IMG/VR virus record: IMGVR_UViG_3300021137_000001
Span: 124,001-188,000 of that record
DNA: 64,000 nt
Strand: one strand, 5' to 3'
Shown: piece by piece, positions 1,661 through 34,308 of the stretch
How positions within the stretch are numbered: position 1 is the first letter of the stretch
Layout: each line of letters starts with the position of its first letter
Position numbers and translations under genes: made by a program
The notes under the pieces: generated by a model
Databases searched by the model: none
Told to the model about the DNA's origin: nothing
The model's input: the letters and a program-made list of their open reading frames with translations, nothing else

Positions 1661-1696
1661 GTTGACTTTATTTTCTGTGTGCTATATACTAGTACT

Positions 1697-3706
1697 ATGA
1701 TTAAAAAATTTGTACTCTCACCGTGGACAGCGTTACTCACGTTAGTCCTTATTATCGCTGTTAAAAATGCAGACTTTACATTTGTCGAAAGCGTAAAACT
1801 ACGTTACTTTGATACATTAATTACACACGAACCCGTACAAAACTCTGGTGTACATACAGTAAACATTGATGAAGCAACACTAAACAAATATGGGCAATGG
1901 CCATTTAGTCGAGACATATATGCAAAACTAATTGAAGATACATTTGCACATGGTGCAGGATTGGTTGTGTTTAATGTTATGATGCCAGAGAAAGATCGCT
2001 TTGGTAAAGATGATGTACTTGCTAACACCTTGCGCAATCACGCCGTTATATTACCTAACGCTGGTGATATGCAGAACAAAAACACTCCACGTCATCCAGG
2101 CGCAAGTATTATCGGAGTAAGCCCTGTTGGATTGGTAGTTGAATATCCGGGCATTATTGCAAATACAAAAGTATTAGAAGAAGCCGCAAGTGGTGTTGGG
2201 CTAGTTAACACATTCCCAGAAGTGGATGGTGTTGTCCGTCGTGCACCTTTAGTTATATTGAGTGGGCAAGACTTATACCCTGCATTAAGTTTAGAAACAT
2301 TACGTGTTGCGGCCGGCGATCCAAGTTTTCAAATTAAACTAAATGACATGGGTGTTGATAAAATGCGCATACCAGCATTTGGTCCTATTCAAACTGACTC
2401 GCTAGGTAGAGTGTGGGTGGATTGGCAACAACGTGCAACATCTCACAGCGCAATGGATATGCCCAACTTTAATAAAGCAATTGTCATCATTGGCACAACA
2501 GCACGTGGCATTAGTAATCCCGTTGCAACAAGTAGAGGCGAAGTATTCCCACATGAGTTACAAGCAAGTGTACTTGGCACAATGATTGCTGGTACAAACA
2601 TACAACGACCCGCATGGGCAGACAGTGCAGAATTGTTTGCGCTAATTGCTATTAGTATTATTATGTTAGTGCTATCACGCTGGGTCTATGTTGGATTAGC
2701 AAGTGGTATTATATTACTTGGTGCAGTAATCCCTGTCACAATGTATTTCTATCACGCAGACAAGTTTTTATTAGACGGCACGTTTATATTAGCAGGTGGT
2801 GTACTTGTTATGCTACATGCTTATGGCATTAAGTTTGTAAGCGAGTTCTTACAAAAACAACAAATTAAGCGACAGTTCGGTAGTTATGTCAACCCTACTA
2901 TTGTTGAACGCTTACAGAAAGACCCAAGTCTTATTAAGTTGGGCGGAGAGAAACGTGAGCTTAGTATTGTTATGACAGACCTGCGTGGGTTTACTACATT
3001 AGGTGAAAGCTTCGGTGATGATGTAGAAGGGCTTACACAAATTATGAATGACTACATGACAGCGTTAAGTATCCCTGTACTAAAGAATGATGGTACACTG
3101 ATTAAATTTATTGGCGATGCAAGTTTACACGTACACGGCGCACCGATTGATGATGTGTATCACGCACGTAACGCAGTCAAGACAGCACTTGAAATGATTA
3201 AAGCCATCGAAGAATTTAACGTTACACTAGTTGCAAGTGGTCGTCCACCAGTTGGTATGGGTGCAGGTGTTAATACTGGCCCAACGCTTATTGGTAACAT
3301 TGGTGCTAAGAGCAAGTTTGGTTATGACGTGTTGGGTGACAGTGTAAGCACAGCCGCACGTTTAGAAGGACAGACTAAAGCATATGGTGTATTACTAATT
3401 ATTGGACCAGAAACTGCTCGCTTGGTTAAAGATGATTTTCATATTGTACATCTCGACAACATTGCGGTTAAAGGTAAGACAGTTGGCTTAGACATCTATA
3501 CTGTTGGACACACAGTTAATTACATACATGATGAATATTTAAAAGAATACTTCCGCGGTAATTGGAAAGAAGCAATTGGGTGGGCCAAGAAGTTAGTTAA
3601 TAATGACGACGTTGATATTAAACATTATTACGAACTAATGATTGAACGTATGGAAGGCGGGCTTCCAGCTAATTGGGATGGAACATATCATGCTACTTCG
3701 AAATAG
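1697..3706 (+). CDS. CHASE2-domain class III adenylate/guanylate cyclase
   Basis: N-terminal TM; CHASE2 motifs (IDE..L..YGQWPFSR, DGVVRR); three TMs; cyclase motifs TDLRGFT, KFIGDA, YDVLGDSVSTAARLEG, VKGK. Confidence 0.92.
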   Translation: MIKKFVLSPWTALLTLVLIIAVKNADFTFVESVKLRYFDTLITHEPVQNSGVHTVNIDEATLNKYGQWPFSRDIYAKLIEDTFAHGAGLVVFNVMMPEKDRFGKDDVLANTLRNHAVILPNAGDMQNKNTPRHPGASIIGVSPVGLVVEYPGIIANTKVLEEAASGVGLVNTFPEVDGVVRRAPLVILSGQDLYPALSLETLRVAAGDPSFQIKLNDMGVDKMRIPAFGPIQTDSLGRVWVDWQQRATSHSAMDMPNFNKAIVIIGTTARGISNPVATSRGEVFPHELQASVLGTMIAGTNIQRPAWADSAELFALIAISIIMLVLSRWVYVGLASGIILLGAVIPVTMYFYHADKFLLDGTFILAGGVLVMLHAYGIKFVSEFLQKQQIKRQFGSYVNPTIVERLQKDPSLIKLGGEKRELSIVMTDLRGFTTLGESFGDDVEGLTQIMNDYMTALSIPVLKNDGTLIKFIGDASLHVHGAPIDDVYHARNAVKTALEMIKAIEEFNVTLVASGRPPVGMGAGVNTGPTLIGNIGAKSKFGYDVLGDSVSTAARLEGQTKAYGVLLIIGPETARLVKDDFHIVHLDNIAVKGKTVGLDIYTVGHTVNYIHDEYLKEYFRGNWKEAIGWAKKLVNNDDVDIKHYYELMIERMEGGLPANWDGTYHATSK

Positions 3707-4448: not shown

Positions 4449-4789
4449 TCTTTCTTTATTTTCGGTAAGGTATCATCTAACTTAGCGGCTTCGTCAAATT
4501 GTGCAGCGGCAGTGCGATCAACTTTAACCTGTTCCATAACACGATCCGATTCAATCATCTTGCCACGTAAATGTAGTACAGTATTAACTTTTTGATTAAG
4601 TCTAATCAAGTCATTATCTAACATACGTATGCGGTCAATAAGGGCAATCAATACATTATTTGCATCTGTGATAACTGGCTTAACTTCTTTAGTACACCAT
4701 TCCCATACCATACGAATAATATATCCCATACCAATTGTCATAATGATAGGAAAACCGTACTTATTAATTAAATCTGCTATTTCGTTCAT
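4445..4789 (-). CDS. Small membrane/coiled-coil protein, paralog of 6194-6472
   Basis: GFP-TM N-terminus; IRMLDNDLIR resembles VKTMNHDVIR in the paralog. Confidence 0.7.
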   Translation of the reverse strand: MNEIADLINKYGFPIIMTIGMGYIIRMVWEWCTKEVKPVITDANNVLIALIDRIRMLDNDLIRLNQKVNTVLHLRGKMIESDRVMEQVKVDRTAAAQFDEAAKLDDTLPKIKKD

Positions 4790-4790
4790 A

Positions 4791-4925
4791 TTATGCTCCT
4801 ATTGCATAAAGTAACATCCATCCTATTGCTACTACAACTGCTATAAACAATGCTTCGTATCTATGACCAGCACCACATTCACATTGTGCGCAAGTACAGT
4901 GCCGATTACGTTCGCGTACACTCAT
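4791..4925 (-). CDS. Small Cys-rich membrane peptide (44 aa, not in ORF track)
   Basis: MSVRERNRHCTCAQCECGAG... with C-terminal TM; ATGA overlap with the upstream small ORF. Confidence 0.55.
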   Translation of the reverse strand: MSVRERNRHCTCAQCECGAGHRYEALFIAVVVAIGWMLLYAIGA

Positions 4926-5080: not shown

Positions 5081-5875
5081 CTAAATGTTATCTTGCGGCG
5101 CTTGCTCGCCAGCTGCCCAACGAGCTAAATTATTACTGTAACGTGTAATACTGTGATTTGAAAAGAAGTTAATATCTTTACGCATAATGCCTTTTACAAA
5201 TCCTCGTGCTACATCTTTAATTAGCTGAGTATAGGTCAGGGTGCGTAAATTTCCCCAGTGATTCATATAGTACATACCACCGAAGTGATGGAATGGCCAT
5301 AATGGAACACGTGCAACAATGTCTGCATTGTTTACGAAGCGGAAGTGTAAAACACCTGTTGCAGTAATGCCTTTAATGTATGCGCTATCACCAACACGTG
5401 GGCTACCATATGTAAACAATGCTTGCGCACTTGGCAATTCTTCATTACGTTGTAGTTTATATGCGACGATTGTAGCCATTGCTGCACCCAAGCTATGTCC
5501 GGCACACCAAATGGTTCGTTTCTTGCTTAATTTGATTAGTTTTGGCTCTAAAGTAGGCCAAATATTGTCTACACTTGACTTAAAACCGTGGTGAACTTTA
5601 CCGATGCCTGTACTACTTGCGACTGGTCGTGCATCTAAATCTGCACCGATATCTTTAAACTCTGTTGGCTGTGTACCGCGACATACGACAATTGCATCAT
5701 CTGCGTTAGTTAGCAAATATGCTTGACTGCTATTAACATTAATAAACTCTGACTTAAAGCCGAGCTCTTTAAATTGCACTTCACTATCTTTTGGGTCACT
5801 ATATGCAATGTCACTTAGTTGTGCAAACAAATGTGCTTGCTCTGGAAACGGGCGCATGTTAATCGGAGTTGTCAT
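5081..5875 (-). CDS. Class 3 lipase (alpha/beta hydrolase)
   Basis: RGT, VHHGF, GHSLGAA, TYGSPRVG, DIVARVP and C-terminal His. Confidence 0.92.
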   Translation of the reverse strand: MTTPINMRPFPEQAHLFAQLSDIAYSDPKDSEVQFKELGFKSEFINVNSSQAYLLTNADDAIVVCRGTQPTEFKDIGADLDARPVASSTGIGKVHHGFKSSVDNIWPTLEPKLIKLSKKRTIWCAGHSLGAAMATIVAYKLQRNEELPSAQALFTYGSPRVGDSAYIKGITATGVLHFRFVNNADIVARVPLWPFHHFGGMYYMNHWGNLRTLTYTQLIKDVARGFVKGIMRKDINFFSNHSITRYSNNLARWAAGEQAPQDNI

Positions 5876-6551: not shown

Positions 6552-6584
6552 GCTATACATACACTAACAACAAGGAAGAACAAA

Positions 6585-6905
6585 ATGACTACACAAACTA
6601 TATTCGACGAAGCGCAACAAGCTGCAATCAAAGCAGAACAAGCATTTCTTGCTACACATGGTGATATGGCTTACTGCGGATTTGCATGGGTAGATGTATT
6701 TGTAGAACGTACTAACTCAACAGCGGCTAAAGAATTGTTAGCAGTCGGCTTTAAGAAAAGCTATCGTCCTAAAACATTAAACTTGTGGACTTGTGGTAGC
6801 TATCATGGACAAAGTATGGATGTAAAAGAAGCTGGTGCGCAAGCGTTTGCAGAAGTTTTACAAAAACATGGCTTCCGTGCTTATATGGGTTCACGTGCAG
6901 ACTAG
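6585..6905 (+). CDS. Hypothetical phage early protein
   Basis: RBS; CGFAWV motif; follows an early promoter. Confidence 0.8.
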   Translation: MTTQTIFDEAQQAAIKAEQAFLATHGDMAYCGFAWVDVFVERTNSTAAKELLAVGFKKSYRPKTLNLWTCGSYHGQSMDVKEAGAQAFAEVLQKHGFRAYMGSRAD

Positions 6906-6906
6906 T

Positions 6907-7122
6907 ATGGAAGTTATTAAAGAAATAACTGATTGGAATGTGGACTTTCGTCAACCCAACCATGTGTACTTGATGGATGGGGATAAAGTATTAGCATATC
7001 AAAAATGGGGCGAAGGTGAACCCATCTACTTTAAGACTAAACAGAAGCTAGATAAGCGTAGACGCAAGTTTGAAAAAGTTAAGGTTAGCCCATTTAATTC
7101 GGTTGACATTTTGGTAAAATGA
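6907..7122 (+). CDS. Hypothetical protein
   Basis: ATG directly after the upstream stop (MEVIKEITDW...PNHVYL). Confidence 0.7.
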   Translation: MEVIKEITDWNVDFRQPNHVYLMDGDKVLAYQKWGEGEPIYFKTKQKLDKRRRKFEKVKVSPFNSVDILVK

Positions 7123-7131
7123 CTGTATAAT
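7103..7131 (+). promoter_or_regulatory. Sigma70-type early promoter
   Basis: TTGACA-N17-TATAAT. Confidence 0.9.
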
Positions 7132-7188
7132 GCTATACATACACTAACAACACGGAGTAATAAAAAATGAACGCACAACAAATTACAA
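7123..7188 (+). repeat. 66-bp direct repeat, copy 1 (promoter -10, RBS and first 7 codons)
   Basis: 65/66 identical to 21323-21388. Confidence 0.95.
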
Positions 7189-7982
7189 ATAAATTTAGTA
7201 AGATGGGTATTTTAGCAGTTGCAGGGTGTTCTTTTGCAGCAGGAACTGGATTTTTCGATGAGAAAGATTCTCCAGAATTATGGGTCAATTTATGTCACAG
7301 AAACATTAATTGTTTCAATGAATTACAATTAGTCAACCTAAGCAAAGGTGGTGCTAGCAATGCTGAAGTTTTTGAACAAGCCGTAGAAGCAATTAGTTTA
7401 TATCCTAATTTAAAATATTTAATTTGTTCTTGGACTTCAATGCCGAGATATAGTTTTAATGTAGGATTTGAATTGTATGACACTAATGCCGGAAACCCGC
7501 CCAGAGAACATAAGTTAAATGATAGGGTTATTCCGGCCGATTATATTGCCAATGTGCGTGATAGACTCAGATCATTGATTCATTTACAATATGAAATAGT
7601 TAAATTAATAAAATATATTAACATAATTAAACAATTAGCACCTAATGTTAAAATTATCAATGTTAATAGTCTATGTCCGTGGGATAATCAGTTTTTTACG
7701 CAACTAACTGATAATTTTTTACCCAGTGACATGACTGAGTTTACAAGAAAAGAAATTTTAAATACCAAAACAAGAGATGATGAAGAAATTTATAAACTAT
7801 ATGCTTTACAGCACAAACAATATACGCAAGTCGGCGGGATAACTGCAAGCTCTTGGGTTAATTTATATAATTCGTTTTTAACTTTACAAACAGATGTTAA
7901 TTTAGATAATCATCACCCTGGCATTAATAGTAACAAATTGTATTACAATTTAGTAAAAATATATACAGAAACAAATTATTAG
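7167..7982 (+). CDS. SGNH/GDSL-like hydrolase
   Basis: GCSFAAG, NLSKGGASN and DNHHPG blocks. Confidence 0.65.
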   Translation: MNAQQITNKFSKMGILAVAGCSFAAGTGFFDEKDSPELWVNLCHRNINCFNELQLVNLSKGGASNAEVFEQAVEAISLYPNLKYLICSWTSMPRYSFNVGFELYDTNAGNPPREHKLNDRVIPADYIANVRDRLRSLIHLQYEIVKLIKYINIIKQLAPNVKIINVNSLCPWDNQFFTQLTDNFLPSDMTEFTRKEILNTKTRDDEEIYKLYALQHKQYTQVGGITASSWVNLYNSFLTLQTDVNLDNHHPGINSNKLYYNLVKIYTETNY

Positions 7983-8246
7983 CCCCTTTGCAGATTAAGT
8001 TCTGTATCCAGAGGAGATGGTGCTCGCGTAATGGCCGCACTTGTAACGTGTAGAGTAGACTACACACTGGATGGCATCAGGTGCAGTGCGCTACACAAAA
8101 GAAGTTAAGTAGTTAACTAACAAAGACCTAGCATTTCTCTCGTAGCTTATACGAGTCGGAGTTGGTCGCCCAATCTCCTTTACTCTGTAGCTTTGCGGAG
8201 TCAATAAGCAAAAGCAAAAGGCAATAGACAGTCGGAAACGATAGTC
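7982..8246 (+). ncRNA. Candidate large structured ncRNA (multi-helix, pseudoknotted)
   Basis: ORF-free, GC-elevated gap with about 9 complementary helices, a terminal closing stem and a GAAA tetraloop. Confidence 0.7.
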
Positions 8247-8252
8247 CTATAT

Positions 8253-9500
8253 CTAAGTAGTTAGTACTCGGTAAAGATCATCATAGGCTATGGCGTTATC
8301 GTTGTAGCCTATTTCCTCGAATAGCGTCTTACAATTATCAAGTAGTTCACGAGTAATGATATGCTTAAACTCACCGTAGAAGTGATGGAAATTGTACTCT
8401 ACGATTGGCGCTATAGCCTCCATAACGCTTCGCTTCTCTTCTGCACTTAACGCACAGTACCACGCAATCTGCGCAACAACAGCTTCTGTACGTGCATCGT
8501 TGTCTGTAATAGTATCATAGCTTTCATCTATAATACCTTCGAATGTTTTAAATCCATATGACTTCAAGTAAGCCAAGTTACCAACCGCCCCAAGTAACAT
8601 AAATGGTTGTTTCATTACAATTGGCTTAAATATTTTTTCAGTTAACTGTAGTTTGTCATAGTAGAATACAGTTTCTGTAACAACATGCCATAAGCTGTCA
8701 TTAGTACAACGTGGGATATCTGCACTAGCTGAACCTAACACACGTTCATTGTCTATAATCAATGGAGTGCTAGGTAAGTGTAATTTAATGTGGTCTACGG
8801 CTTTGCTTGACAACTTTGTATTAACATCAGCAATCTCTTCTTGCCAGCTTGCTTGTTCTGTAGCTAGCCCAAAGCTCACTTGTCCATGTTCTAATAATAA
8901 TTCTTCGGCTAATTTGCTCACAAAGTAGCAACGATAGCTACGATCATTTGACACAAGCCTATTGAATGTTATATAATCGTAAGTATAGTCCTTAATTACT
9001 TGTTTGTTATAGTTTAGTGCGTAAAACCCGCGATACCAATCAAGTGCGGCAAAACCGTGAAAGAAGTAATACAATAGTCGAGCATCATATTTTATAGCAC
9101 AAGAATCAACTAGTGCAGATTTCTCACTAGTAACAATAGTTTTCTTTTTATATACATATTGTGGATTAGCCAAATTTTCCATGTGTTCGTCCAACGATAT
9201 ACAACCAGTTAATCCATATGGAAGATTATTTTGTAACATAAGTTGATACATTTCATGCATATCTCTCCCATCAGAATATGTAAATAAATCCATATATTGT
9301 TCGACTATTTGCTGCAGGTGCGGTTCCTGATCATAAAAGAAGATTTTTTCTGTGGTGCGGAAACTTGGCGTAAATAATACTATATCATTGATAGTTACCT
9401 GATTAGTATTAATTACACCATTTTTACAATAATAGAAATCAAAGTTCTCAACAAAGATAGTAGAATATAAAAATTCGTAAACATGATCAATTTGGAGCAT
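8253..9500 (-). CDS. Putative glycosyltransferase-like protein, paralog of 15088-16080
   Basis: VVTET...LTEKIFKPI...PF...YLKSYGFKTF...IDESYD block resembles the C-terminus of GT-B/fucosyltransferase-like proteins. The ORF is solid; the function is tentative. Confidence 0.55.
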   Translation of the reverse strand: MLQIDHVYEFLYSTIFVENFDFYYCKNGVINTNQVTINDIVLFTPSFRTTEKIFFYDQEPHLQQIVEQYMDLFTYSDGRDMHEMYQLMLQNNLPYGLTGCISLDEHMENLANPQYVYKKKTIVTSEKSALVDSCAIKYDARLLYYFFHGFAALDWYRGFYALNYNKQVIKDYTYDYITFNRLVSNDRSYRCYFVSKLAEELLLEHGQVSFGLATEQASWQEEIADVNTKLSSKAVDHIKLHLPSTPLIIDNERVLGSASADIPRCTNDSLWHVVTETVFYYDKLQLTEKIFKPIVMKQPFMLLGAVGNLAYLKSYGFKTFEGIIDESYDTITDNDARTEAVVAQIAWYCALSAEEKRSVMEAIAPIVEYNFHHFYGEFKHIITRELLDNCKTLFEEIGYNDNAIAYDDLYRVLTT

Positions 9501-9503
9501 TAA

Positions 9504-9554
9504 ATGTCGTCTCAATTAAAAACAGTAGGTTTCATTGGTATTGGCAAATTATAG
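9504..9554 (+). pseudogene. Orphan 5' fragment of the nucleotide-sugar dehydrogenase (MSSQLKTVGFIGIGKL*)
   Basis: GGAG RBS; the peptide matches the N-terminus VGFVGLGKL of ORF 10198. Confidence 0.85.
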
Positions 9555-9583: not shown

Positions 9584-10201
9584 ATGAACCAACCATACAC
9601 ATATTTAATCGGATGGAGTACCCAGCAAAAATATTATTACGGAGTACGCTATGCCATTGATTGTAATCCCACTGATCTTTGGGCAAAATACTTTACATCT
9701 TCGCCTACTGTTAAAGCAATGCGATTAATTTATGGTGAACCAGATGTGCGCCAAATTAGAAAAATATTTACTGACAAACAAGCTGCAAGATTATGGGAAA
9801 CAAAAGTATTACGCAGAATGAAAGTAATACGTAGAGAAGAATTTTTAAACAAGAATGATGCGCCGGCTCCTCCAATAAACAATAGAATTATGTCGGATTC
9901 AACTAAAGAAAAAATAAGTGCGTCTAATAAAAGTAAGCCTAAATCAGAAGAGCACAAACAAAAGATTAGAGAAGCAAGAGCAAAACAAATTAATACAAGA
10001 AAAGGGCAGACTCAAACTGAAGAAACAAAACAAAAGATTAGAGAAGCAAGAGCAAAACAAATTACGTCAGATGAAACAAAACAAAAAATGAGTATGCAAC
10101 AAAAATTAGCAGGTGGGTATGGTCCTAAAAAACACACCGAAGAAACAAAACAAAAAATTAGAAATACATTAATGGAAAAATTTAAAAAGGGTAGTATATG
10201 A
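9584..10201 (+). CDS. Free-standing homing endonuclease (GIY-YIG-like with NUMOD3 repeats)
   Basis: YTYLI...YYGVR; repeated (H/Q)TEETKQKI motifs; TATAAATA promoter at 9571-9578. Confidence 0.85.
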   Translation: MNQPYTYLIGWSTQQKYYYGVRYAIDCNPTDLWAKYFTSSPTVKAMRLIYGEPDVRQIRKIFTDKQAARLWETKVLRRMKVIRREEFLNKNDAPAPPINNRIMSDSTKEKISASNKSKPKSEEHKQKIREARAKQINTRKGQTQTEETKQKIREARAKQITSDETKQKMSMQQKLAGGYGPKKHTEETKQKIRNTLMEKFKKGSI

Positions 10202-11427
10202 ATAATGTAGGATTTGTAGGGTTAGGGAAATTAGGAATGGCATGTGCAGAAGTGATGGCACAAACATATGACGTCACTGGCTATGATATTTACCCACGTA
10301 CTGGTGATAAGATAGCAATATCTGATACATTAGAAGGAGCAGTAAAGGGCAAGGATGTTATCTTTGTTGCAGTACAAACACCGCATGATCCGATCTATGA
10401 TGGCTCGCAACCAATTACACATTTACCAAACAAAGACTTTGATTATACAATTATAAATCAAGTATTAGCAGACATTAATCAATACGTTACGCAAGATCAA
10501 CTTGTAGTATTAATCAGCACAGTACTACCAGGAACAACACGTAGAGAGCTACGTAAGCATATCACTAACGCACGTTTCATCTATAACCCATACTTAATTG
10601 CAATGGGTTCTGTAGCGTGGGATATGGTTAACCCAGACATGATTATTATCGGTACAGAAGATGGTAGCGTAACTGGTGATGCTAAGTTGCTTACAGACTT
10701 TTACGCACCACTAATGCAAAACAATCCACATATTGCAATTGGCACATGGGATGAAGCAGAAGCAATTAAAATCTTCTACAATACATTTATTAGTACTAAA
10801 GTTGGCTTAGTAAACATGATACAAGACGTTGCTATGAAGTCAGGCAACATTAATGTTGATGTTGTAACTGACGCATTATGCGCTTCTACTATGCGTATCA
10901 TTAGTACAAAGTATATGACAGCGGGTATGGGTGATGCAGGCCCGTGTCACCCACGTGATAACATTGCGCTACGTTGGTTAGCTGAGAATTTAGACTTGGG
11001 CTACGATATTTTTAATACAGTTATATATGCACGTGAGATACAAGCAAAGAATCTTGCTATATATCTTAGTGATTTACAAGAATTAACTGATTTGCCTATC
11101 GTTATACACGGAAAAGCGTACAAGCCAGATGTGGATCTATTAGATGGCAGTTATAGCCTCTTAATCGGCAGTTATCTGACTGAAATAGGAGCAAAATACA
11201 CTTATTCTGATCCTTTAACAGGTGACATTGTTGCTGATGACACAACTGCTATTGTACTACTTGCTCACAATAGAACTATTACCTACGGTTACACCGGCGA
11301 ACTGCCAGAACAACAATTGTATTACCGACTTGGATTAAGTAGTATTGTAGTTGACCCGTGGCGCAAGTTTAAAACAGACACAAAATCAATTAAGGTTCTG
11401 CATTATGGCAACACACGAATTAATTAA
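10198..11427 (+). CDS. UDP-glucose/GDP-mannose 6-dehydrogenase family
   Basis: GLGKLG Rossmann motif, AVQTP, STVLPG, KIFYN, catalytic GPCHPRD, KAYKP. Confidence 0.92.
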   Translation: MNNVGFVGLGKLGMACAEVMAQTYDVTGYDIYPRTGDKIAISDTLEGAVKGKDVIFVAVQTPHDPIYDGSQPITHLPNKDFDYTIINQVLADINQYVTQDQLVVLISTVLPGTTRRELRKHITNARFIYNPYLIAMGSVAWDMVNPDMIIIGTEDGSVTGDAKLLTDFYAPLMQNNPHIAIGTWDEAEAIKIFYNTFISTKVGLVNMIQDVAMKSGNINVDVVTDALCASTMRIISTKYMTAGMGDAGPCHPRDNIALRWLAENLDLGYDIFNTVIYAREIQAKNLAIYLSDLQELTDLPIVIHGKAYKPDVDLLDGSYSLLIGSYLTEIGAKYTYSDPLTGDIVADDTTAIVLLAHNRTITYGYTGELPEQQLYYRLGLSSIVVDPWRKFKTDTKSIKVLHYGNTRIN

Positions 11428-19008: not shown

Positions 19009-19629
19009 ATGCCGAATTTAGTCCCAATGGTAGTAGAACGTACAAGTCAAGGCGAACGTGCTTATGACATTTATTCACGTCTACTTAAAGATCGTATCGT
19101 TATGTTAGATACAGATGTTAACGAGCAGACAGCAAGTTCAATCGTTGCACAGTTGCTATTTTTAGAAAGCGAAAGCCCAGAGAAAGACATTTTGTTCTAC
19201 ATTAACTCACCGGGCGGAAGCGTAACTGCTGGCTTGGCAATTTACGATACAATGCAGTTTATTAAATGCGATGTGTCGACTATTGTACTTGGACAAGCAT
19301 GTTCAATGGGTTCATTCTTGGCGCAAGCTGGTGCTAAAGGTAAGCGTATTGTATTGCCAGAAGCACGTACAATGATTCATCGAGTTAGCTCCGGCACTCC
19401 GGGCACACGTGGTAGCGTACACGTACAAGAATTACAATTCGAAGATGCTAAACGTAGCTTTGACGAATCAATGCGTATTAATCAACGCTTAACTGAATTG
19501 TATGTACGTCATAATACTGCGGGAAAAACTTACGAAGACTTATTTGAAACTATGAAGTTTGATACGTTCTTATCAGCAGACGAAGCAGTAGCATATGGTT
19601 TGGCAGATGAAGTTATTACAAAACGTTAA
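19009..19629 (+). CDS. clpP: ATP-dependent Clp protease proteolytic subunit
   Basis: [25 protein letters not shown] (Ser) and MIH (His). Confidence 0.97.
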
Positions 19630-20942
19630 TGCTTAAAGATACATTTTGCTCAAGTCCATGGTTTCATATTAGGATAGGGCCATCGGGTAAATTTTTACCT
19701 TGCCGATGGGGGTCGCATGACGATACTGGTTATAATATTGCAACAACATCTATCGCAGAATTTATGAATTCTGATATCATGCAAGGAATTAGAGCCTCTC
19801 TATTAGATGGTGACAAATTACGTATGTGCAGTAGTTGTCATTATGAAGATTCGAACAATAAAGTAAGTGGACGTCAACGCCAACTCTTAAAGAGCGTAAT
19901 TAGTATTACAAATTTTGATAAGACATTTTGTGCAAGCCCACATTATGAAATATTTGAATATAGTGCCACTAATAATGGTCATACTAATAGTTTGCCAATT
20001 GATTTACAAATTGATCTCGGCAATACTTGTAATAGTGGTTGTATTATGTGTACTCCGACTTATAGCAGTAAATTATCTAACGACTATGTTAAACTTAACA
20101 AACTAGAACCGACATTATTTAAATCCTTTTCTAAATTTAAGAATTGGGCAGATGATCCAATATTAATGGATAAGTTTGTAGCAGAATTAATTACTATTCC
20201 TAACATTAAATACATACATTTCTTGGGTGGTGAAACACTTTACTTAAAAAGTTTTTATGATATTTGTGAAAGATTAATAGAAGCAGGAGTTGCGAAGGAT
20301 ATTAATATCGGAACAACAACTAATTGTACTGTGTATTCAGAAGAATTAGAAAACATTATTAAGAATTTTAAGCATGTTCATTTGGGACTTAGTATTGAAT
20401 CTCTACATGAAGTTAATGATTATATTCGTTATCCGAGTACGATTGATTCAGTATCATCGAACATTCAGAAATTTTTGGATCTTAGAAAGCAAACTAATTT
20501 ACATTTAAGTTTGCGTATAACGCCGACTATCTTCAGCATTTATCATTTAGATACATTATTTGAATTTATGATTAATAATTCTATTATTGCAGAAAGTTGT
20601 GATATATTATACGAACCGAGTTGGTTACGAATTGAACTATTGCCACCAAATTTAATTGCTATTGCACTTGAAAAACTTAATGCAGTTATAAATAAATATC
20701 AATTAACCAATAGTAATCAGGTTATTATTAATCGCAGGCGAGATGATTTGATTGACCCAGTTATTACAAGCATACTTTTTGAATATAAACATTTCCTTGA
20801 GAATTACCAAGTACCCAATGATGTGGACGAAGAACGCCACAATTTAGTTAAATTTATTAAAGCATTCGAATCATTGCGCAATAATACAATATTGGATTAT
20901 CTCCCAGAATATGAAGAATTTTTACGACAGTACGGTTATTAA
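19629..20942 (+). CDS. Radical SAM protein with N-terminal twitch/SPASM-like domain
   Basis: CxxPW...PC...CxxC followed by CNSGCIMC and GGETL. Confidence 0.88.
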   Translation: MLKDTFCSSPWFHIRIGPSGKFLPCRWGSHDDTGYNIATTSIAEFMNSDIMQGIRASLLDGDKLRMCSSCHYEDSNNKVSGRQRQLLKSVISITNFDKTFCASPHYEIFEYSATNNGHTNSLPIDLQIDLGNTCNSGCIMCTPTYSSKLSNDYVKLNKLEPTLFKSFSKFKNWADDPILMDKFVAELITIPNIKYIHFLGGETLYLKSFYDICERLIEAGVAKDINIGTTTNCTVYSEELENIIKNFKHVHLGLSIESLHEVNDYIRYPSTIDSVSSNIQKFLDLRKQTNLHLSLRITPTIFSIYHLDTLFEFMINNSIIAESCDILYEPSWLRIELLPPNLIAIALEKLNAVINKYQLTNSNQVIINRRRDDLIDPVITSILFEYKHFLENYQVPNDVDEERHNLVKFIKAFESLRNNTILDYLPEYEEFLRQYGY

Positions 20943-23308: not shown

Positions 23309-23440
23309 ATGAAAAGAAAGAAATTAATAAGAAAAATGTATCTAGCATGTGTGCGTAAGAATACAAAGAAACAAAAGAAACTATGGCTTAAAGCATTAAA
23401 GCTAAGTTTGAAACACAAACACACTGAAGTAATTCAGTAA
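23309..23440 (+). CDS. Small highly basic protein (43 aa) immediately upstream of tmRNA
   Basis: AAGGA RBS; MKRKKLIRKMYLACVRK... Confidence 0.6.
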   Translation: MKRKKLIRKMYLACVRKNTKKQKKLWLKALKLSLKHKHTEVIQ

Positions 23441-23447
23441 AAGAAAT

Positions 23448-23783
23448 TGTTGTATAACTCTCAAAGTAAGGATTGCAAGACGCGGGGGCAGAACCCGCCA
23501 TCTCCACCAAAGATATATTAAGCAATATTGGCAAGAAACGCCATAAGTTCGGTAGTATATCTTTGATGGGGATGACTTAGATTCGATTGCGATAGATAGG
23601 ATAAAGGGCAACACGTGGGGTCACGTTAAATGCAAAAACCGTAAATGCAGAAAAAGCAAATACAACTGGTGCAGTAAAAGTATCTATGGGTCGTGGCTTC
23701 CGCTTCGGTTCACGTACTGATGCTGCTGTTTTAGCTTAGTCTAAAACAACCGGGGTAGGACTTACCTGGCAACAGAAACAACC
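23448..23783 (+). ncRNA. ssrA: Circularly permuted two-piece tmRNA (outer ends approximate)
   Basis: T-arm plus CATCTCCACCA ending 23509; hairpin spacer; GGGGATG 5' end at 23568 (G3-U70 pair); tag ORF 23647-23739; terminator follows. Confidence 0.92.
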
Positions 23784-23808
23784 AAAAAGCCCCGCAAGGG
23801 GCTTTTTT
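23784..23808 (+). terminator. Rho-independent terminator of tmRNA
   Basis: AAAAAGCCCC-GCAA-GGGGCTTTTTT. Confidence 0.9.
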
Positions 23809-25965: not shown

Positions 25966-27856
<1,891 letters not shown>

Positions 27857-32961: not shown

Positions 32962-34308
32962 ATGGGTGTACAAATGATAAACGCTATTTTAGAAGAAGTT
33001 GCAAACGAACCAAGTAAGAATGCAAAAATTGCTATCCTTACTCAGCATAAAGACAATAAAGTATTACAAGAAGTTGTTCGTTTAACCTACGACCCAACTG
33101 TAAACTTCTTCATTAAGAAAATTCCTACATACAAACAAATTGATACAACAGATATCAGTTTAACAGAAGCAATTAGTCAACTTGGTCAGTTAAGCAGCAG
33201 ACAAGTTACTGGTACTGCTGGTATTAATCATTTACAAAATATTCTAAGTAACTTACCTGAAGAAAAAGCAAAAGTAATTGCTAAAATTATTGACCGTGAC
33301 TTACGTGCGGGCTTCGGTGAGTCAACAGCAAACAAAGTATGGAAGAATTTAATTCCAGAGTTTCCATATATGCGTTGCGCACTTCCTAAAGCCGCTAAGT
33401 TAGATGAGTTTAGCTGGGTTGATGGTGTGTTTAGTCAGCTTAAAGCAGATGGTATGTTTGCCAACGTAAATCATACAGCAGATGGCGAAGTACAAATTTT
33501 AAGTCGCGCTGGTTCATTGTTTCCACAACAACACTTTGCACATTTAGTCACTGATGTACAAGCAACGTTCCCAACTAATACACAATCACATGGTGAATTG
33601 TTAATTAAACGTGATGGTGTTGTGCTTCCCAGACAGTTAGGTAACGGTATCTTAAACAAGGTACAAAAAGGTGGCGACATTGGACCAAATGACGAGATTG
33701 TTTACTTAGTTTGGGACCAAATTGCCTTAACTTCAGTCGTTTCTAAAGGTACTTACAATGTTCCGTATAAAGCTCGCTTTGCTGAATTAGCAACACAAAC
33801 ATTAACGGCAACTTGTATTACCCTAATCCCAACTGTTATTGTACATAACATGGAAGATGCACTTACACACTATCGTGAAATGCTTGCAGAAGGATTAGAA
33901 GGCACAATCATTAAAGATGCACAGGGTATTTGGAAAGATACAACAAGCAAACAACAAGTTAAAATGAAACTCGAAACAATCATTGATCTTATTATCACTG
34001 GGTTTAATGCAGGTAAAGGTAAAAATGAAGATACATTTGGTTCTATTGCTTGTCGATCAAGTGATGGCTTACTTGAAGTTAATGTAAGCGGCTTTACTGA
34101 TTCAGATAGAATCAGTATCTGGGCAAGCAAGGACGAAGTAATTGGCAAGATTATGGCAGTTAAATCTAACAGCATTATGCCACCGAGTGATAGTAATACA
34201 AGTTACTCATTATTTTTACCACGTTGCGAAGAAATTAGAGATGATAAACAAATAGCAGATGATTTACAACGTATCATCGATCAATTTGAAAGCGCAATTA
34301 AGGATTAA
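32962..34308 (+). CDS. ATP-dependent DNA ligase (T4 gp30-like)
   Basis: KADG, HGEL, VWD, EGTIIK, KMK and SLFLP motifs. Confidence 0.95.
   Translation: MGVQMINAILEEVANEPSKNAKIAILTQHKDNKVLQEVVRLTYDPTVNFFIKKIPTYKQIDTTDISLTEAISQLGQLSSRQVTGTAGINHLQNILSNLPEEKAKVIAKIIDRDLRAGFGESTANKVWKNLIPEFPYMRCALPKAAKLDEFSWVDGVFSQLKADGMFANVNHTADGEVQILSRAGSLFPQQHFAHLVTDVQATFPTNTQSHGELLIKRDGVVLPRQLGNGILNKVQKGGDIGPNDEIVYLVWDQIALTSVVSKGTYNVPYKARFAELATQTLTATCITLIPTVIVHNMEDALTHYREMLAEGLEGTIIKDAQGIWKDTTSKQQVKMKLETIIDLIITGFNAGKGKNEDTFGSIACRSSDGLLEVNVSGFTDSDRISIWASKDEVIGKIMAVKSNSIMPPSDSNTSYSLFLPRCEEIRDDKQIADDLQRIIDQFESAIKD

What the first reader, a model, noticed from the sequence alone, without database searches (positions are those of the whole stretch)
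7982..8246. Orphan ~265-nt multi-helix, pseudoknotted RNA
Seen in an ORF-free gap: closing stem 7982-7991 with 8214-8222; AGGAGA 8012-8017 with TCTCCT 8174-8179; GGTGCT 8019-8024 with AGCATT 8130-8135; GCACTTG 8037-8043 with CAGGTGC 8078-8084, enclosing hairpin GTGTAG/CTACAC 8048-8065. Further hairpins lie at 8103-8118, 8139-8155, 8182-8201 and 8227-8246 (GAAA tetraloop). Two crossing pairings (ATCCAG 8006-8011 with CTGGAT 8067-8072; GACC 8125-8128 with GGTC 8164-8167) imply pseudoknots. G-U pairs and the GNRA loop favour the + strand. No + gene follows, so it is unlikely to be a 5' cis-regulator here. The GGAGATGGTGCTCGC segment loosely recalls the phage-associated manA motif, but this is from memory and unverified. 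Inference: a free-standing large ncRNA or ribozyme-like RNA of unknown function.
Basis: partly seen in the sequence, partly recalled or inferred. Interest (0 to 1): 0.82.

Follow-up and report, generated by a model that had tools for sequence, protein, structure and literature searches.

The report
Partial copy of large phage RNA
The gap holds a real, strongly conserved RNA fold, but it is only the front domain of a larger, unexplained RNA that more than a hundred uncultured freshwater T4-like phage contigs carry next to nuclease genes, and this copy is probably a leftover.

Summary
The ORF-free gap and most of the listed hairpins exist. Only the first ~95 nt (7982-8076, + strand) are a conserved RNA. 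They form a three-way junction found in 65 distinct sequences, with 99.9% of cells paired and 19 of 24 pairs showing compensatory changes. This junction is the "type-A" 5' domain of a ~450-nt structured RNA found in more than 120 IMG/VR contigs. It was not found in cultured phages or in bacterial genomes. The RNA lies downstream of a SegE-like GIY-YIG or a PDDEXK nuclease gene and converges on a T4 baseplate gene. Its ~330-nt 3' core, with a covarying pseudoknot, has no Rfam family. In sister lineages the 5' domain is instead the orphan Rfam motif Polynucleobacter-1. The window copy lacks the 3' core. It has U where 64 of 65 members have G (8044). It sits in a mosaic insertion that replaced a uvdE-like gene. 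The same 329-kb phage has a regular copy about 180 kb away. The most likely reading is a co-transcribed but degenerate partial copy. A working short variant is not excluded. No transcript data could be obtained.

The parts
7103..7131 (+). Sigma-70-type promoter (TTGACA, 17 nt, TATAAT; 12 of 12 matches), 35 nt upstream of the 271-aa ORF. It is the likely source of transcripts that run into the RNA element.
   Evidence: No terminator-like site lies between it and the element. That the RNA is transcribed is inferred, not shown.
7167..7982 (+). 271-aa ORF, SGNH/GDSL-esterase-like (a lead only). Its stop codon TAG overlaps the first base of the RNA element.
   Evidence: No Pfam, PHROG, NCBIfam, PADLOC or PDB match. 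Its protein-atlas neighbours are phage 'SGNH hydrolase-type esterase', DUF6071 and Lipase_GDSL clusters. Homologs (33-56% aa identity) lie near the same RNA in T4-like contigs. Those of L043 and L088 abut its 5' end directly. Others lie in a gap of about 810-840 nt between the seg-like gene and the RNA (L174, L206 and four more).
7982..8004 (+). Variable 5' leader with a small hairpin (7991-7994 paired with 8001-8004).
   Evidence: The helix covaries: 3 of 4 pairs change on both sides. The leader sequence varies among members.
8005..8073 (+). Type-A 5' domain, a three-way junction. The closing helix is 8005-8011/8067-8073. The junction strand AGGAGAU is 8012-8018. One helix is 8019-8023/8037-8041 with an inner 8026-8027/8034-8035. 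The junction strand UGUAAC is 8042-8047, with U8044 where 64 of 65 members have G. The hairpin is 8048-8053/8060-8065 with loop AGUAGA.
   Evidence: The covariance model R1 scores it 117.5 bits, E about 2e-29, as high as full-length members. Covariation is shown. The minimum-free-energy fold of 7982-8076 alone gives the same structure. The deviation at 8044 is.
8077..8170 (+). Divergent spacer with local hairpins 8103-8118 and 8139-8155. It takes the place of about 160 nt of conserved helices in full-length members.
   Evidence: Identity to L043 drops from 92.6% to 39% at 8077. No homolog was found in any fetched locus or by a k-mer scan of IMG/VR. The same breakpoint is seen in strain variants. 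GUUAACUAAC at 8112-8121 resembles the family's pseudoknot loop GCUAACUAC, by eye only.
8171..8181 (+). CAAUCUCCUUU, identical to the family's conserved strand CAAUCUCYUUU. It is preceded by a small hairpin (8162-8165/8170-8173), as in the family, and is complementary to AGGAGAU 8012-8018.
   Evidence: A match this good arises in about 0.2% of dinucleotide shuffles of 8077-8252. The pairing itself is unproven: it does not covary in the family, and 12 of 84 sequences break its central pair. Strain variants A8172G and A8173G keep the small hairpin as U.G on the + strand only.
8182..8201 (+). Hairpin ACUCUGUAGCUUUGCGGAGU, with no comparative data.
   Evidence: Minimum-free-energy folds. It has no U-tract, so it is not terminator-like.
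8203..8252 (.). An A-rich tract plus the hairpin 8227-8246 (GAAA loop on +). This is probably the 3' flank of the 420-aa gene: read on the - strand it is a hairpin followed by a U-rich run. It may be a decayed remnant of the uvdE-like gene's 3' end. It is probably not part of the conserved RNA.
   Evidence: It resembles weakly the uvdE-like 3' end next to the 420-aa gene in relatives L006-L008 (nhmmer E = 2.7e-6, a value that includes the coding part). The consensus scan calls no terminator.
8254..8263 (.). Second copy of the 10-nt direct repeat TAAGTAGTTA (first copy at 8106-8115), at the stop codon of the 420-aa gene. A natural variant joins the two copies and so deletes 8116-8263.
   Evidence: The sequence is. 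The joining unitig is in DNA run X23 (loose end after 8115).
8253..9515 (-). Convergent 420-aa ORF of unknown function. It is complete, since relatives align to its last residue.
   Evidence: No family match.

Best explanation
The element is a partial extra copy of a large structured phage RNA.

Shown:
- Positions 8005-8073 fold into a three-way junction (the 'type-A' 5' domain) that is under strong RNA-level selection in 65 distinct sequences.
- In 82 of the 83 loci where the model finds this domain, a ~330-nt 3' core with a covarying pseudoknot and a terminator-like end follows about 25-60 nt later. The whole ~450-nt RNA sits downstream of a nuclease gene and converges on a T4-type baseplate gene.
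- The window copy has the junction and one 11-nt strand of the core (8171-8181). The rest of the core is missing.
- The window copy carries U at a junction position that is G in 64 of 65 members.
- It lies in a roughly 1.3-kb insertion (small ORF, promoter, esterase-like gene, RNA) that replaced a uvdE-like gene.
- The same genome has a regular copy about 180 kb away.

Inferred:
- The esterase-like gene and the adjoining front of the RNA were imported together by recombination. The 5' edge of this RNA gene is a hot spot for insertions and homing-endonuclease genes.
- The fragment is transcribed from the perfect sigma-70-type promoter at 7103-7131 as the 3' tail of the esterase-like mRNA.
- It is functionally degenerate. 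Any residual activity would be that of the isolated junction, for example binding whatever partner recognises it.

The function of the parent RNA is unknown. My best guess is a stable protein-binding RNA scaffold made early in infection. The reasons are that its junction strands and several loops are conserved in sequence while the helices covary freely, and that its 5' domain type goes with the type of the upstream nuclease gene.
For: Family membership: nhmmer with the family profile matches window 7983-8079 to profile positions 2-98 (E = 7e-31) and nothing else in the window. Model R1 scores it 117.5 bits.

Structure: 99.9% of cells paired, 19 of 24 pairs with changes on both sides, covariation score 0.563 against 0.149 in shuffles (0 of 500), and 23-46% paired when the partners are slid. 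An independent MAFFT alignment gives 98.1% paired and 11 such pairs.

The core is missing: identity to L043 is 92.6% in 7982-8076 and 39% after 8077, and no homolog of 8074-8255 was found.

The core is the widespread part: its pattern hits more than 120 contigs. It is present without the type-A domain in L061, L118, L135, L141, L148 and others. Its helices and pseudoknot covary in 110 unique sequences.

Deviant base: 8044 is U in the window and G in 64 of 65 members.

Second copy in the same contig: L136 lies at contig 303593-313086, and the window is contig 124001-188000.

Mosaic locus: relatives L004 and L009 have a uvdE-like gene here and no RNA. Homology with them ends just after the 106-aa gene. 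Strain variants show the same breakpoint and a repeat-mediated deletion.

Insertion hot spot at the RNA's 5' edge: the seg-like gene's end lies 5 to 1775 nt from the RNA's 5' end. The gaps hold esterase-like, GIY-YIG or radical-SAM genes, or a promoter spacer.

Promoter.
Against: The junction itself is intact: all 24 pairs are kept, and it is 93-97% identical to T4-like members, while the adjoining gene is only 68% identical in DNA (56% at third positions and in protein) to its closest sampled relative. A dead remnant of that age should have decayed, unless the donor is unsampled or gene conversion refreshed it.

The retained CAAUCUCCUUU (p about 0.002) and the collinear scraps suggest a reduced but ordered RNA rather than a random fusion.

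The short form persists at 95% identity or more in several lake metagenomes from 2012 to 2023, and some contigs are more diverged.

There is no transcript evidence either way. I could read only the first ~290 nt of the 'regular' copy, so I have not shown that it is complete.
Confidence: 0.5

Rival explanations
1. A working short variant. The three-way junction is an autonomous functional module, and the window RNA (about 7982-8201) is a reduced form kept by selection. It would bind the same partner as the 5' domain of the long RNA, with AGGAGAU 8012-8018 clamped by AUCUCCU 8173-8179.
For: The junction is intact and scores as high as true members. It is far better conserved than the adjacent gene. 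The family strand CAAUCUCYUUU is kept behind a small hairpin as in the family, and here its U to C change turns a G.U into a G-C. The strain SNPs at 8172, 8173 and 8229 keep their pairs only on the + strand. The gene before it has its own strong promoter. The element persists in several lakes and years.
Against: It lacks the part of the family that is most widespread and that exists even without this junction. It has a unique substitution at a G conserved in 64 of 65 members. The AGGAGAU:AUCUCUU helix has no covariation, and its central pair is broken in 12 of 84 members. The right part does not fold significantly and is polymorphic for a 148-nt deletion. The genome has a regular copy.
Confidence: 0.3
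2. RNA partner of a nuclease. The large RNA is a cofactor, scaffold or guide for the small nuclease encoded just upstream: a 144-aa GIY-YIG protein made of the catalytic domain only, or a 173-aa PDDEXK protein. The 5' domain would be the protein-specific handle. The window copy would then be an orphan handle acting in trans with the seg-like protein encoded elsewhere in the genome, or a decoy.
For: The type-A domain goes with a seg-like gene upstream in nearly every locus that has enough flank. Loci without it have a PDDEXK_15 gene and another 5' domain. The seg-like protein is little more than the GIY-YIG domain (residues 7-123 of 144). The association holds in the distant L061, where the seg-like protein is 39% identical.
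Against: Linkage of a homing-endonuclease gene with a resistant allele of its neighbouring target explains the same pattern more simply. Seg-like homologs in cultured Kyanoviridae (Melnitz, P-SSM4) have no RNA gap downstream. L201 pairs PDDEXK_15 with type A. Insertions of up to 1.8 kb separate the gene from the RNA. No variable guide-like segment was identified. There are no biochemical data.
Confidence: 0.07
3. There is no RNA function at all, only the 3' ends of two convergent genes, with terminator hairpins and chance complementarity.
For: The element lies between convergent genes. The right part folds no better than chance. The hairpin 8227-8246 followed by a U-rich run on the - strand could end the 420-aa gene's transcript.
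Against: The left part is a member of a family with overwhelming covariation. The consensus scan finds no terminator-like site.
Confidence: 0.05
4. A member of a described class: manA motif, group I intron, small self-cleaving ribozyme, riboswitch, tmRNA or tRNA-like RNA.
For: Homing-endonuclease genes nearby suggested an intron. The junction has the size of an aptamer.
Against: No Rfam 15 family matches 7800-8450 at E up to 10 except one chance snoRNA hit, and none matches full-length relatives. Both flanking genes are complete, so there are no exons. ARAGORN finds nothing. No gene follows on the + strand.
Confidence: 0.02

Closest known systems
Polynucleobacter-1 RNA motif (Rfam RF01718; Weinberg et al. 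2010, PMC2864571)
   Same: In sister phage lineages it occupies the slot that the window's domain holds in type-A members: immediately 5' of the same ~330-nt core, after a nuclease gene. L061 scores 88.7 bits; L118, L124 and L148 score 39.2 bits against a gathering score of 37. It comes from fresh water and its function is unknown. By eye, both have a GGAAC-like junction followed by a hairpin whose loop holds AGUAG. That resemblance is unverified.
   Different: The RF01718 model does not match the window or any type-A member, even at E up to 10. The helix layout differs. The 2010 description covers 141 nt only and lists the motif as possibly cis-regulatory in Burkholderiales and in fresh water or estuary samples. 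It does not mention the downstream core or a phage context.
GOLLD, ROOL and OLE large ornate RNAs
   Same: They are large, many-helix, pseudoknotted non-coding RNAs of unknown biochemical role. GOLLD and ROOL are often phage-borne (my own knowledge, and PMC12286853 as listed).
   Different: There is no sequence or model match. The parent RNA here is smaller (about 450 nt). I have no evidence of multimer formation. The window copy is only a fragment.
T4 SegB and the tRNA gene cluster; nuclease genes at boundaries of exchange between phages
   Same: A free-standing GIY-YIG homing-endonuclease gene sits beside structured-RNA genes and drives co-inheritance of its flanks (PMC2330249). Nuclease genes mark recombination boundaries (PMC10448857; both are cited from the abstracts listed). 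Here the seg-like gene and the RNA front are much better conserved than the neighbouring baseplate gene (76-89% against 40-57% aa identity), and the homology breakpoints are sharp.
   Different: No cleavage site is known here, and homing is inferred only. The window copy has no adjacent seg-like gene.
Nuclease-associated RNAs (HEARO/omega RNA of IscB, TnpB reRNA)
   Same: A conserved structured RNA lies next to a small nuclease gene on the same strand.
   Different: The nucleases here are of GIY-YIG and PDDEXK type, not RuvC or HNH. There is no Rfam match, no guide segment and no transposon ends. The link may be mere genetic hitch-hiking.

Membership tests
Type-A 5' domain of the large freshwater-phage RNA (family defined here) | A three-way junction of 24 base pairs in four helices, in the family's register | tested here: met
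   R1 scores it 117.5 bits over model positions 1-100. All pairs are standard in the window row. The minimum-free-energy fold agrees.
Type-A 5' domain of the large freshwater-phage RNA (family defined here) | Conserved junction nucleotides (GAGGAGAU and UGGAAC) | tested here: inconclusive
   GAGGAGAU is kept. UGGAAC is UGUAAC in the window: 8044 is U, against G in 64 of 65 distinct members.
Full-length large phage RNA (about 450 nt) | The ~330-nt 3' core: helices Pf, Pg, Ph, Pi and Pl, the pseudoknot GCUAACUA:UAGUUAGU, and two terminal hairpins | tested here: not met
   The family profile aligns only positions 2-98 to the window. Only the 11-nt strand CAAUCUCCUUU is kept.
Full-length large phage RNA (about 450 nt) | Position downstream of a seg-like GIY-YIG or PDDEXK_15 gene and convergent with a T4 baseplate gene | tested here: not met
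   Upstream is the esterase-like ORF, as in L043 and L088, but without the seg-like gene. Downstream is a 420-aa ORF of unknown function.
manA RNA motif (RF01745) | A match to the curated covariance model | tested here: not met
   No hit at the gathering score or at E up to 10 on 7800-8450.
Polynucleobacter-1 RNA (RF01718) | A match to the curated covariance model | tested here: not met
   No hit in the window or in the type-A relative L030. The model does match the 5' part of L061, L118, L124 and L148.
Group I intron | A match to the Rfam model, and a host gene split into exons on the same strand | tested here: not met
   No Rfam hit. The 271-aa and 420-aa ORFs are complete and convergent.
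Intrinsic terminator | A G+C-rich hairpin followed by a U-tract | tested here: not met
   No site on either strand in 7700-8500. The hairpin 8227-8246 with an interrupted U-rich run on the - strand remains a weak candidate by eye.
Expressed non-coding RNA | A transcript with defined ends | not testable with these tools
   No RNA run was listed for the element. The one RNA run laid on the window covers only 8235-8494 at about 92% identity.

The most novel reading that the evidence does not exclude
The parent RNA is the RNA subunit of a new kind of phage ribonucleoprotein nuclease. Interchangeable 5' domains (type A, or Polynucleobacter-1-like) would be handles matched to the co-encoded small GIY-YIG or PDDEXK nuclease, and the shared pseudoknotted core would carry the common function. 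The window's isolated type-A handle would then be a trans-acting regulator or decoy of the seg-like nuclease encoded 180 kb away.
Probability: 0.07. Interest if true: 0.9.

Novelty: new variant of a known kind. Interest (0 to 1): 0.6.

Why it matters
Following this fragment led to a ~450-nt, pseudoknotted RNA with very strong covariation in more than 120 uncultured freshwater T4-like and jumbo phage contigs. Its 3' core and its type-A 5' domain are absent from Rfam 15, from 50,697 cultured-phage records and from 185,579 bacterial and archaeal genomes.

It also gives a context to an orphan Rfam motif from 2010, Polynucleobacter-1. In these phage contigs that motif lies directly 5' of the core, in the slot that the type-A domain fills in other lineages, which suggests it is an alternative 5' domain of the same RNA.

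The exchangeable 5' domains track the type of nuclease gene next door. That makes two ideas testable: homing endonucleases reshaping a structured-RNA gene by co-conversion, or an RNA-nuclease partnership.

The window copy itself matters mainly as a natural dissection. It is the 5' domain alone, with one change at a nearly invariant base, in a genome that also has the full RNA.

Tried and rejected
- Rfam on the window (gathering score, and E up to 10 around the element) and on relatives found nothing relevant. manA, group I and II introns, ribozymes, riboswitches and the large RNAs are rejected.
- ARAGORN found no tRNA or tmRNA in the element or in relatives.
- Coding and readthrough. The small ORF inside the junction is broken by compensatory hairpin changes (TAG in L025, by eye). 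Reading through the TAG at 7980 gives no conserved frame, and TAG also ends the 420-aa gene. Rejected.
- Synteny in relatives of the jumbo phage (L004-L016). The RNA is absent, and a uvdE-like gene sits there instead.
- A second copy inside the window: none.
- Cultured phages: no DNA match for the window element, for L030, for L061 or for the L141 and L148 types.
- Bacterial and archaeal genomes: no match to either pattern.
- A k-mer scan for the right part of the element found only chance hits and the same phage.
- A scan with the baseplate protein found only itself.
- RNA-seq: no run was listed, and the one RNA run does not cover the element.
- The long-range helix AGGAGAU:AUCUCUU looked attractive in the first alifold but has no covariation in 84 sequences, and some of them break it. 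It is kept only as a possibility.
- My early belief that the 35-nt core is invariant came from the search pattern itself. The larger set shows that helix 8019-8023/8037-8041 covaries freely.
- A catalogue of about 10,000 candidate viral RNAs (PMC10690425; candidates of 29-151 nt) may hold pieces of this family. Its supplements are not held as text, so this could not be checked. A full-text search for core sequences found no paper.
Full report
**1. What is at the coordinates**

The window is part of a 329-kb phage contig, IMGVR_UViG_3300021137_000001. The window corresponds to contig positions 124001-188000. Its genes include a T4-type clamp loader, tail-fibre-like proteins, a chaperonin and a DNA ligase.

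Positions 7983-8252 hold no ORF of 50 aa or more. They lie between a 271-aa ORF (7167-7982, +) and a convergent 420-aa ORF (8253-9515, -). G+C rises to 0.47 there. The 265 nt fold better than shuffles on the + strand (z = -3.1) and less so on the - strand (z = -2.0). No Rfam 15 family matches, either at the gathering score or at E up to 10. That includes manA. There is no tRNA or tmRNA at this place.

**2. It has relatives, but only its left part does**

Relatives of the jumbo phage found through the 420-aa gene (L004-L016) lack the element. L004 and L009 have a uvdE-like gene in its place.

An exact 16-mer from the element found T4-like contigs that share window 7982-8076 at 93-97% identity. 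From there they continue into a different, well-conserved, ORF-free stretch of about 450 nt in total, which ends in a terminator-like hairpin.

The family profile aligns only its positions 2-98 to the window (7983-8079, E = 7e-31). Against L043 the identity is as follows:

| Region | Identity |
|---|---|
| Esterase-like gene, DNA | 68% |
| Esterase-like gene, third codon positions | 56% |
| Esterase-like gene, protein | 56% |
| 7982-8076 | 92.6% |
| Right of 8077 | 39% |

The right part (8074-8255) has no relative in any fetched locus. A k-mer scan of IMG/VR found only the same phage.

**3. The left part is a real RNA domain**

On an independent MAFFT alignment of 18 distinct sequences, the four-helix three-way junction has 98.1% of cells paired and 11 pairs with changes on both sides. 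No shuffle out of 500 does as well.

I built a covariance model from that alignment (R1). It finds the domain in 83 loci, which give 65 distinct sequences. On that alignment:
- 99.9% of cells are paired.
- 19 of 24 pairs change on both sides.
- The covariation score is 0.563 against 0.149 in shuffles (0 of 500).
- Slid controls pair at 23-46%.

The caveat is that this alignment is fitted to the model.

In window coordinates the domain is:
- closing helix 8005-8011/8067-8073
- junction AGGAGAU, 8012-8018
- helix 8019-8023/8037-8041, with inner pairs 8026-8027/8034-8035
- junction 8042-8047
- hairpin 8048-8053/8060-8065

The minimum-free-energy fold of 7982-8076 alone gives the same structure.

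Conserved G.U pairs fix the strand as +. The closing pair is U.G in 65 of 65 sequences. The first pair of the second helix is G.U in 30 sequences.

The window copy scores 117.5 bits, as high as full-length members. It is also the only one of the 65 with U instead of G at 8044, in the UGGAAC junction.

**4. The right part**

Taken alone, 8077-8252 does not fold significantly (z = -1.6 on +, -0.6 on -). It is a row of simple hairpins.

One piece is clearly family-like. CAAUCUCCUUU (8171-8181), behind a 4-bp hairpin, equals the family's CAAUCUCYUUU. A match that good arises in about 0.2% of shuffles. In the family, however, this pairing never covaries, and 12 of 84 sequences break its central pair. 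I treat the helix as unproven.

Positions 8203-8252 resemble weakly the decayed 3' end of the uvdE-like gene that abuts the 420-aa gene in L006-L008. Read on the - strand they are a hairpin followed by a U-rich run. This stretch probably belongs to the 420-aa gene's 3' flank.

Contigs from other lake metagenomes carry the short form at 95-99% identity. Their few SNPs (8172, 8173, 8229) keep pairs on the + strand only. Some unitigs differ left of 8074 or 8057. One unitig joins 8115 to 8264 through the 10-nt direct repeat TAAGTAGTTA, which occurs at 8106-8115 and 8254-8263. The locus is therefore mosaic and polymorphic.

**5. The family is large, and its core is the part the window lacks**

Most of these carry the whole RNA, with 5' cores that my first patterns had missed.

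In 110 unique sequences the core helices covary, and so does a pseudoknot. The pseudoknot joins the loop GCUAACUA with UAGUUAGU, and 4 of its 8 pairs change on both sides. In the distant L061 the pseudoknot reads UUGGUUU:AAACCAA (by eye).

A subset of loci has the core without the type-A domain: L118, L135, L141, L148, L166, L167, L175, L213 and L061. In L061, L118, L124 and L148 the sequence just 5' of the core is the Rfam motif Polynucleobacter-1. The scores are 88.7 bits for L061 and 39.2 bits for the other three, against a gathering score of 37. That motif is an orphan from 2010, listed for Burkholderiales and fresh water or estuary samples. No other paper in the library mentions it.

The family is absent from cultured phages. 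Neither search pattern is found in 185,579 bacterial and archaeal genomes.

**6. Context of the family**

Type-A members follow a 144-aa SegE-like GIY-YIG gene (PF19835, E = 4e-39). The gene's end lies 5 to 1775 nt from the RNA's 5' end. The larger gaps hold varied cargo:
- an esterase-like gene (L043, L088, L174, L206 and others)
- another GIY-YIG/NUMOD3-like gene (L048, L058)
- a radical-SAM gene (L092)
- a 115-nt spacer with a promoter-like site (L032)

Members without the type-A domain follow a 173-aa PDDEXK_15 gene instead (PF24608). L201 combines PDDEXK_15 with type A.

All members converge on a T4 baseplate gene (PF12322). Among the same loci the seg-like protein is 76-89% identical and the baseplate protein only 40-57%. 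The nuclease gene and the RNA front therefore behave as an exchanged block.

Seg-like homologs in cultured Kyanoviridae (Melnitz, P-SSM4) have no such RNA gap after them.

**7. The window locus in that light**

Homology with the jumbo relatives ends just after the 106-aa gene, near 6925. It resumes at or near the end of the 420-aa gene. Between these points lie:
- a 71-aa ORF
- a perfect sigma-70-type promoter at 7103-7131, followed by the phage's own 5'-leader motif
- the esterase-like gene
- the RNA fragment

The junction between the esterase-like gene and the RNA is the same as in L043 and L088.

The same contig has a regular family copy at about 312,794 onward (L136). It is preceded by three homing-endonuclease-like genes. 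Its type-A domain differs in sequence from the window's and shows compensatory changes, for example UUCGG/CCGAA where the window has GGUGC/GCACU. So the window fragment is not a duplicate of the resident copy. It resembles the copies of smaller T4-like phages.

**8. Explanation**

Shown: the element contains a bona fide type-A 5' domain plus one short core strand, it lacks the family's core, and it lies in an inserted mosaic.

Inferred, confidence 0.5: it was imported together with the esterase-like gene at a recombination hot spot, it is co-transcribed from the promoter at 7103, and it is a degenerate partial copy.

What speaks against a dead remnant is the intact junction beside a much-diverged gene. 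For that reason a working short variant keeps 0.3.

The parent RNA's function is unknown. Its junction strands and several loops are conserved in sequence while the helices covary freely. Two hairpin loops flanking one long helix change in parallel between lineages. The 5' domain type is matched to the nuclease type. Together these suggest a protein-binding scaffold. Co-conversion by homing endonucleases explains the linkage at least as well. An RNA-nuclease particle is the most novel reading left open (0.07).

**9. Novelty and limits**

The type-A domain and the ~330-nt core are in no Rfam family. One alternative 5' domain is a known orphan motif. I therefore rate the finding as a new variant of a known kind, namely large orphan structured RNAs of phages.

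The limits are:
- No expression data could be obtained.
- The regular copy could be read only for its first ~290 nt.
- The more diverged short forms seen in run X23 could not be fetched.
- The catalogue of candidate viral RNAs (PMC10690425) could not be checked for fragments of this family.

Noticed in passing
window 23404-23786 (+): A permuted (two-piece type) tmRNA gene in this jumbo phage. Rfam tmRNA_permuted scores 91.6 bits and alpha_tmRNA 71.4 bits. ARAGORN does not call it.
   Followed up: no
L136 (same contig, 303593-313086), RNA from locus position 9202 to the locus end: The window's own phage carries a regular copy of the large RNA about 180 kb away. It is preceded by three homing-endonuclease-like genes: a 192-aa NUMOD3 gene, a seg-like GIY-YIG gene and a 232-aa NUMOD3 gene.
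   Followed up: partly
L061 3927-4069; L148 6160-6299; L118 9817-9956 (-); L124 240-379 (-): In these phage contigs the Rfam orphan motif Polynucleobacter-1 (RF01718) lies directly 5' of the same ~330-nt RNA core, downstream of a nuclease gene. It appears to be one domain of a larger phage RNA.
   Followed up: partly
window 9584-10201 (+): A GIY-YIG plus NUMOD3 homing-endonuclease-like ORF of 205 aa lies just beyond the 420-aa gene, next to a UDP-glucose/GDP-mannose dehydrogenase-like gene at 10198-11427.
   Followed up: no
window 1679-3706 (+): A phage-encoded protein of 675 aa with a CHASE2 sensor domain and an adenylate/guanylate cyclase domain.
   Followed up: no
window 6560-6585 and 7140-7166: The same 5'-leader motif, ACACTAACAACA followed by a GGA-rich ribosome-binding site, precedes both the 106-aa gene and the esterase-like gene. 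It also precedes the 106-aa gene in relatives L004 and L007. It looks like a shared early-gene leader.
   Followed up: no
window 8106-8115 and 8254-8263: A 10-nt direct repeat, TAAGTAGTTA. A unitig in DNA run X23 joins the two copies, which deletes 148 nt including most of the right part of the element.
   Followed up: partly
window 8258-8271; L006, L007 and L008 at the end of the 420-aa gene homolog; family RNA after AUCUCUUU: A two-block identity, TAGTTAGT plus ACTCG(G), links the family RNA with the stop-codon region of the 420-aa gene, even in relatives that have no RNA there. It may be a microhomology joint of the insertion, or a coincidence.
   Followed up: partly
long-form RNAs, for example L030 about 4740-4830: Two hairpin loops on either side of the long helix Pl (ACUCGGAUGAU and AUCUGGAUGAU) change in parallel between lineages: both become CAGAUAA-type together.
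   Followed up: no
window 5081-5875 (-), 26246-27856 (+), 32962-34308 (+), 19629-20942 (+): A class-3 lipase, a Cpn60-type chaperonin, an ATP-dependent DNA ligase and a radical-SAM/SPASM protein, all encoded by the phage.
   Followed up: no
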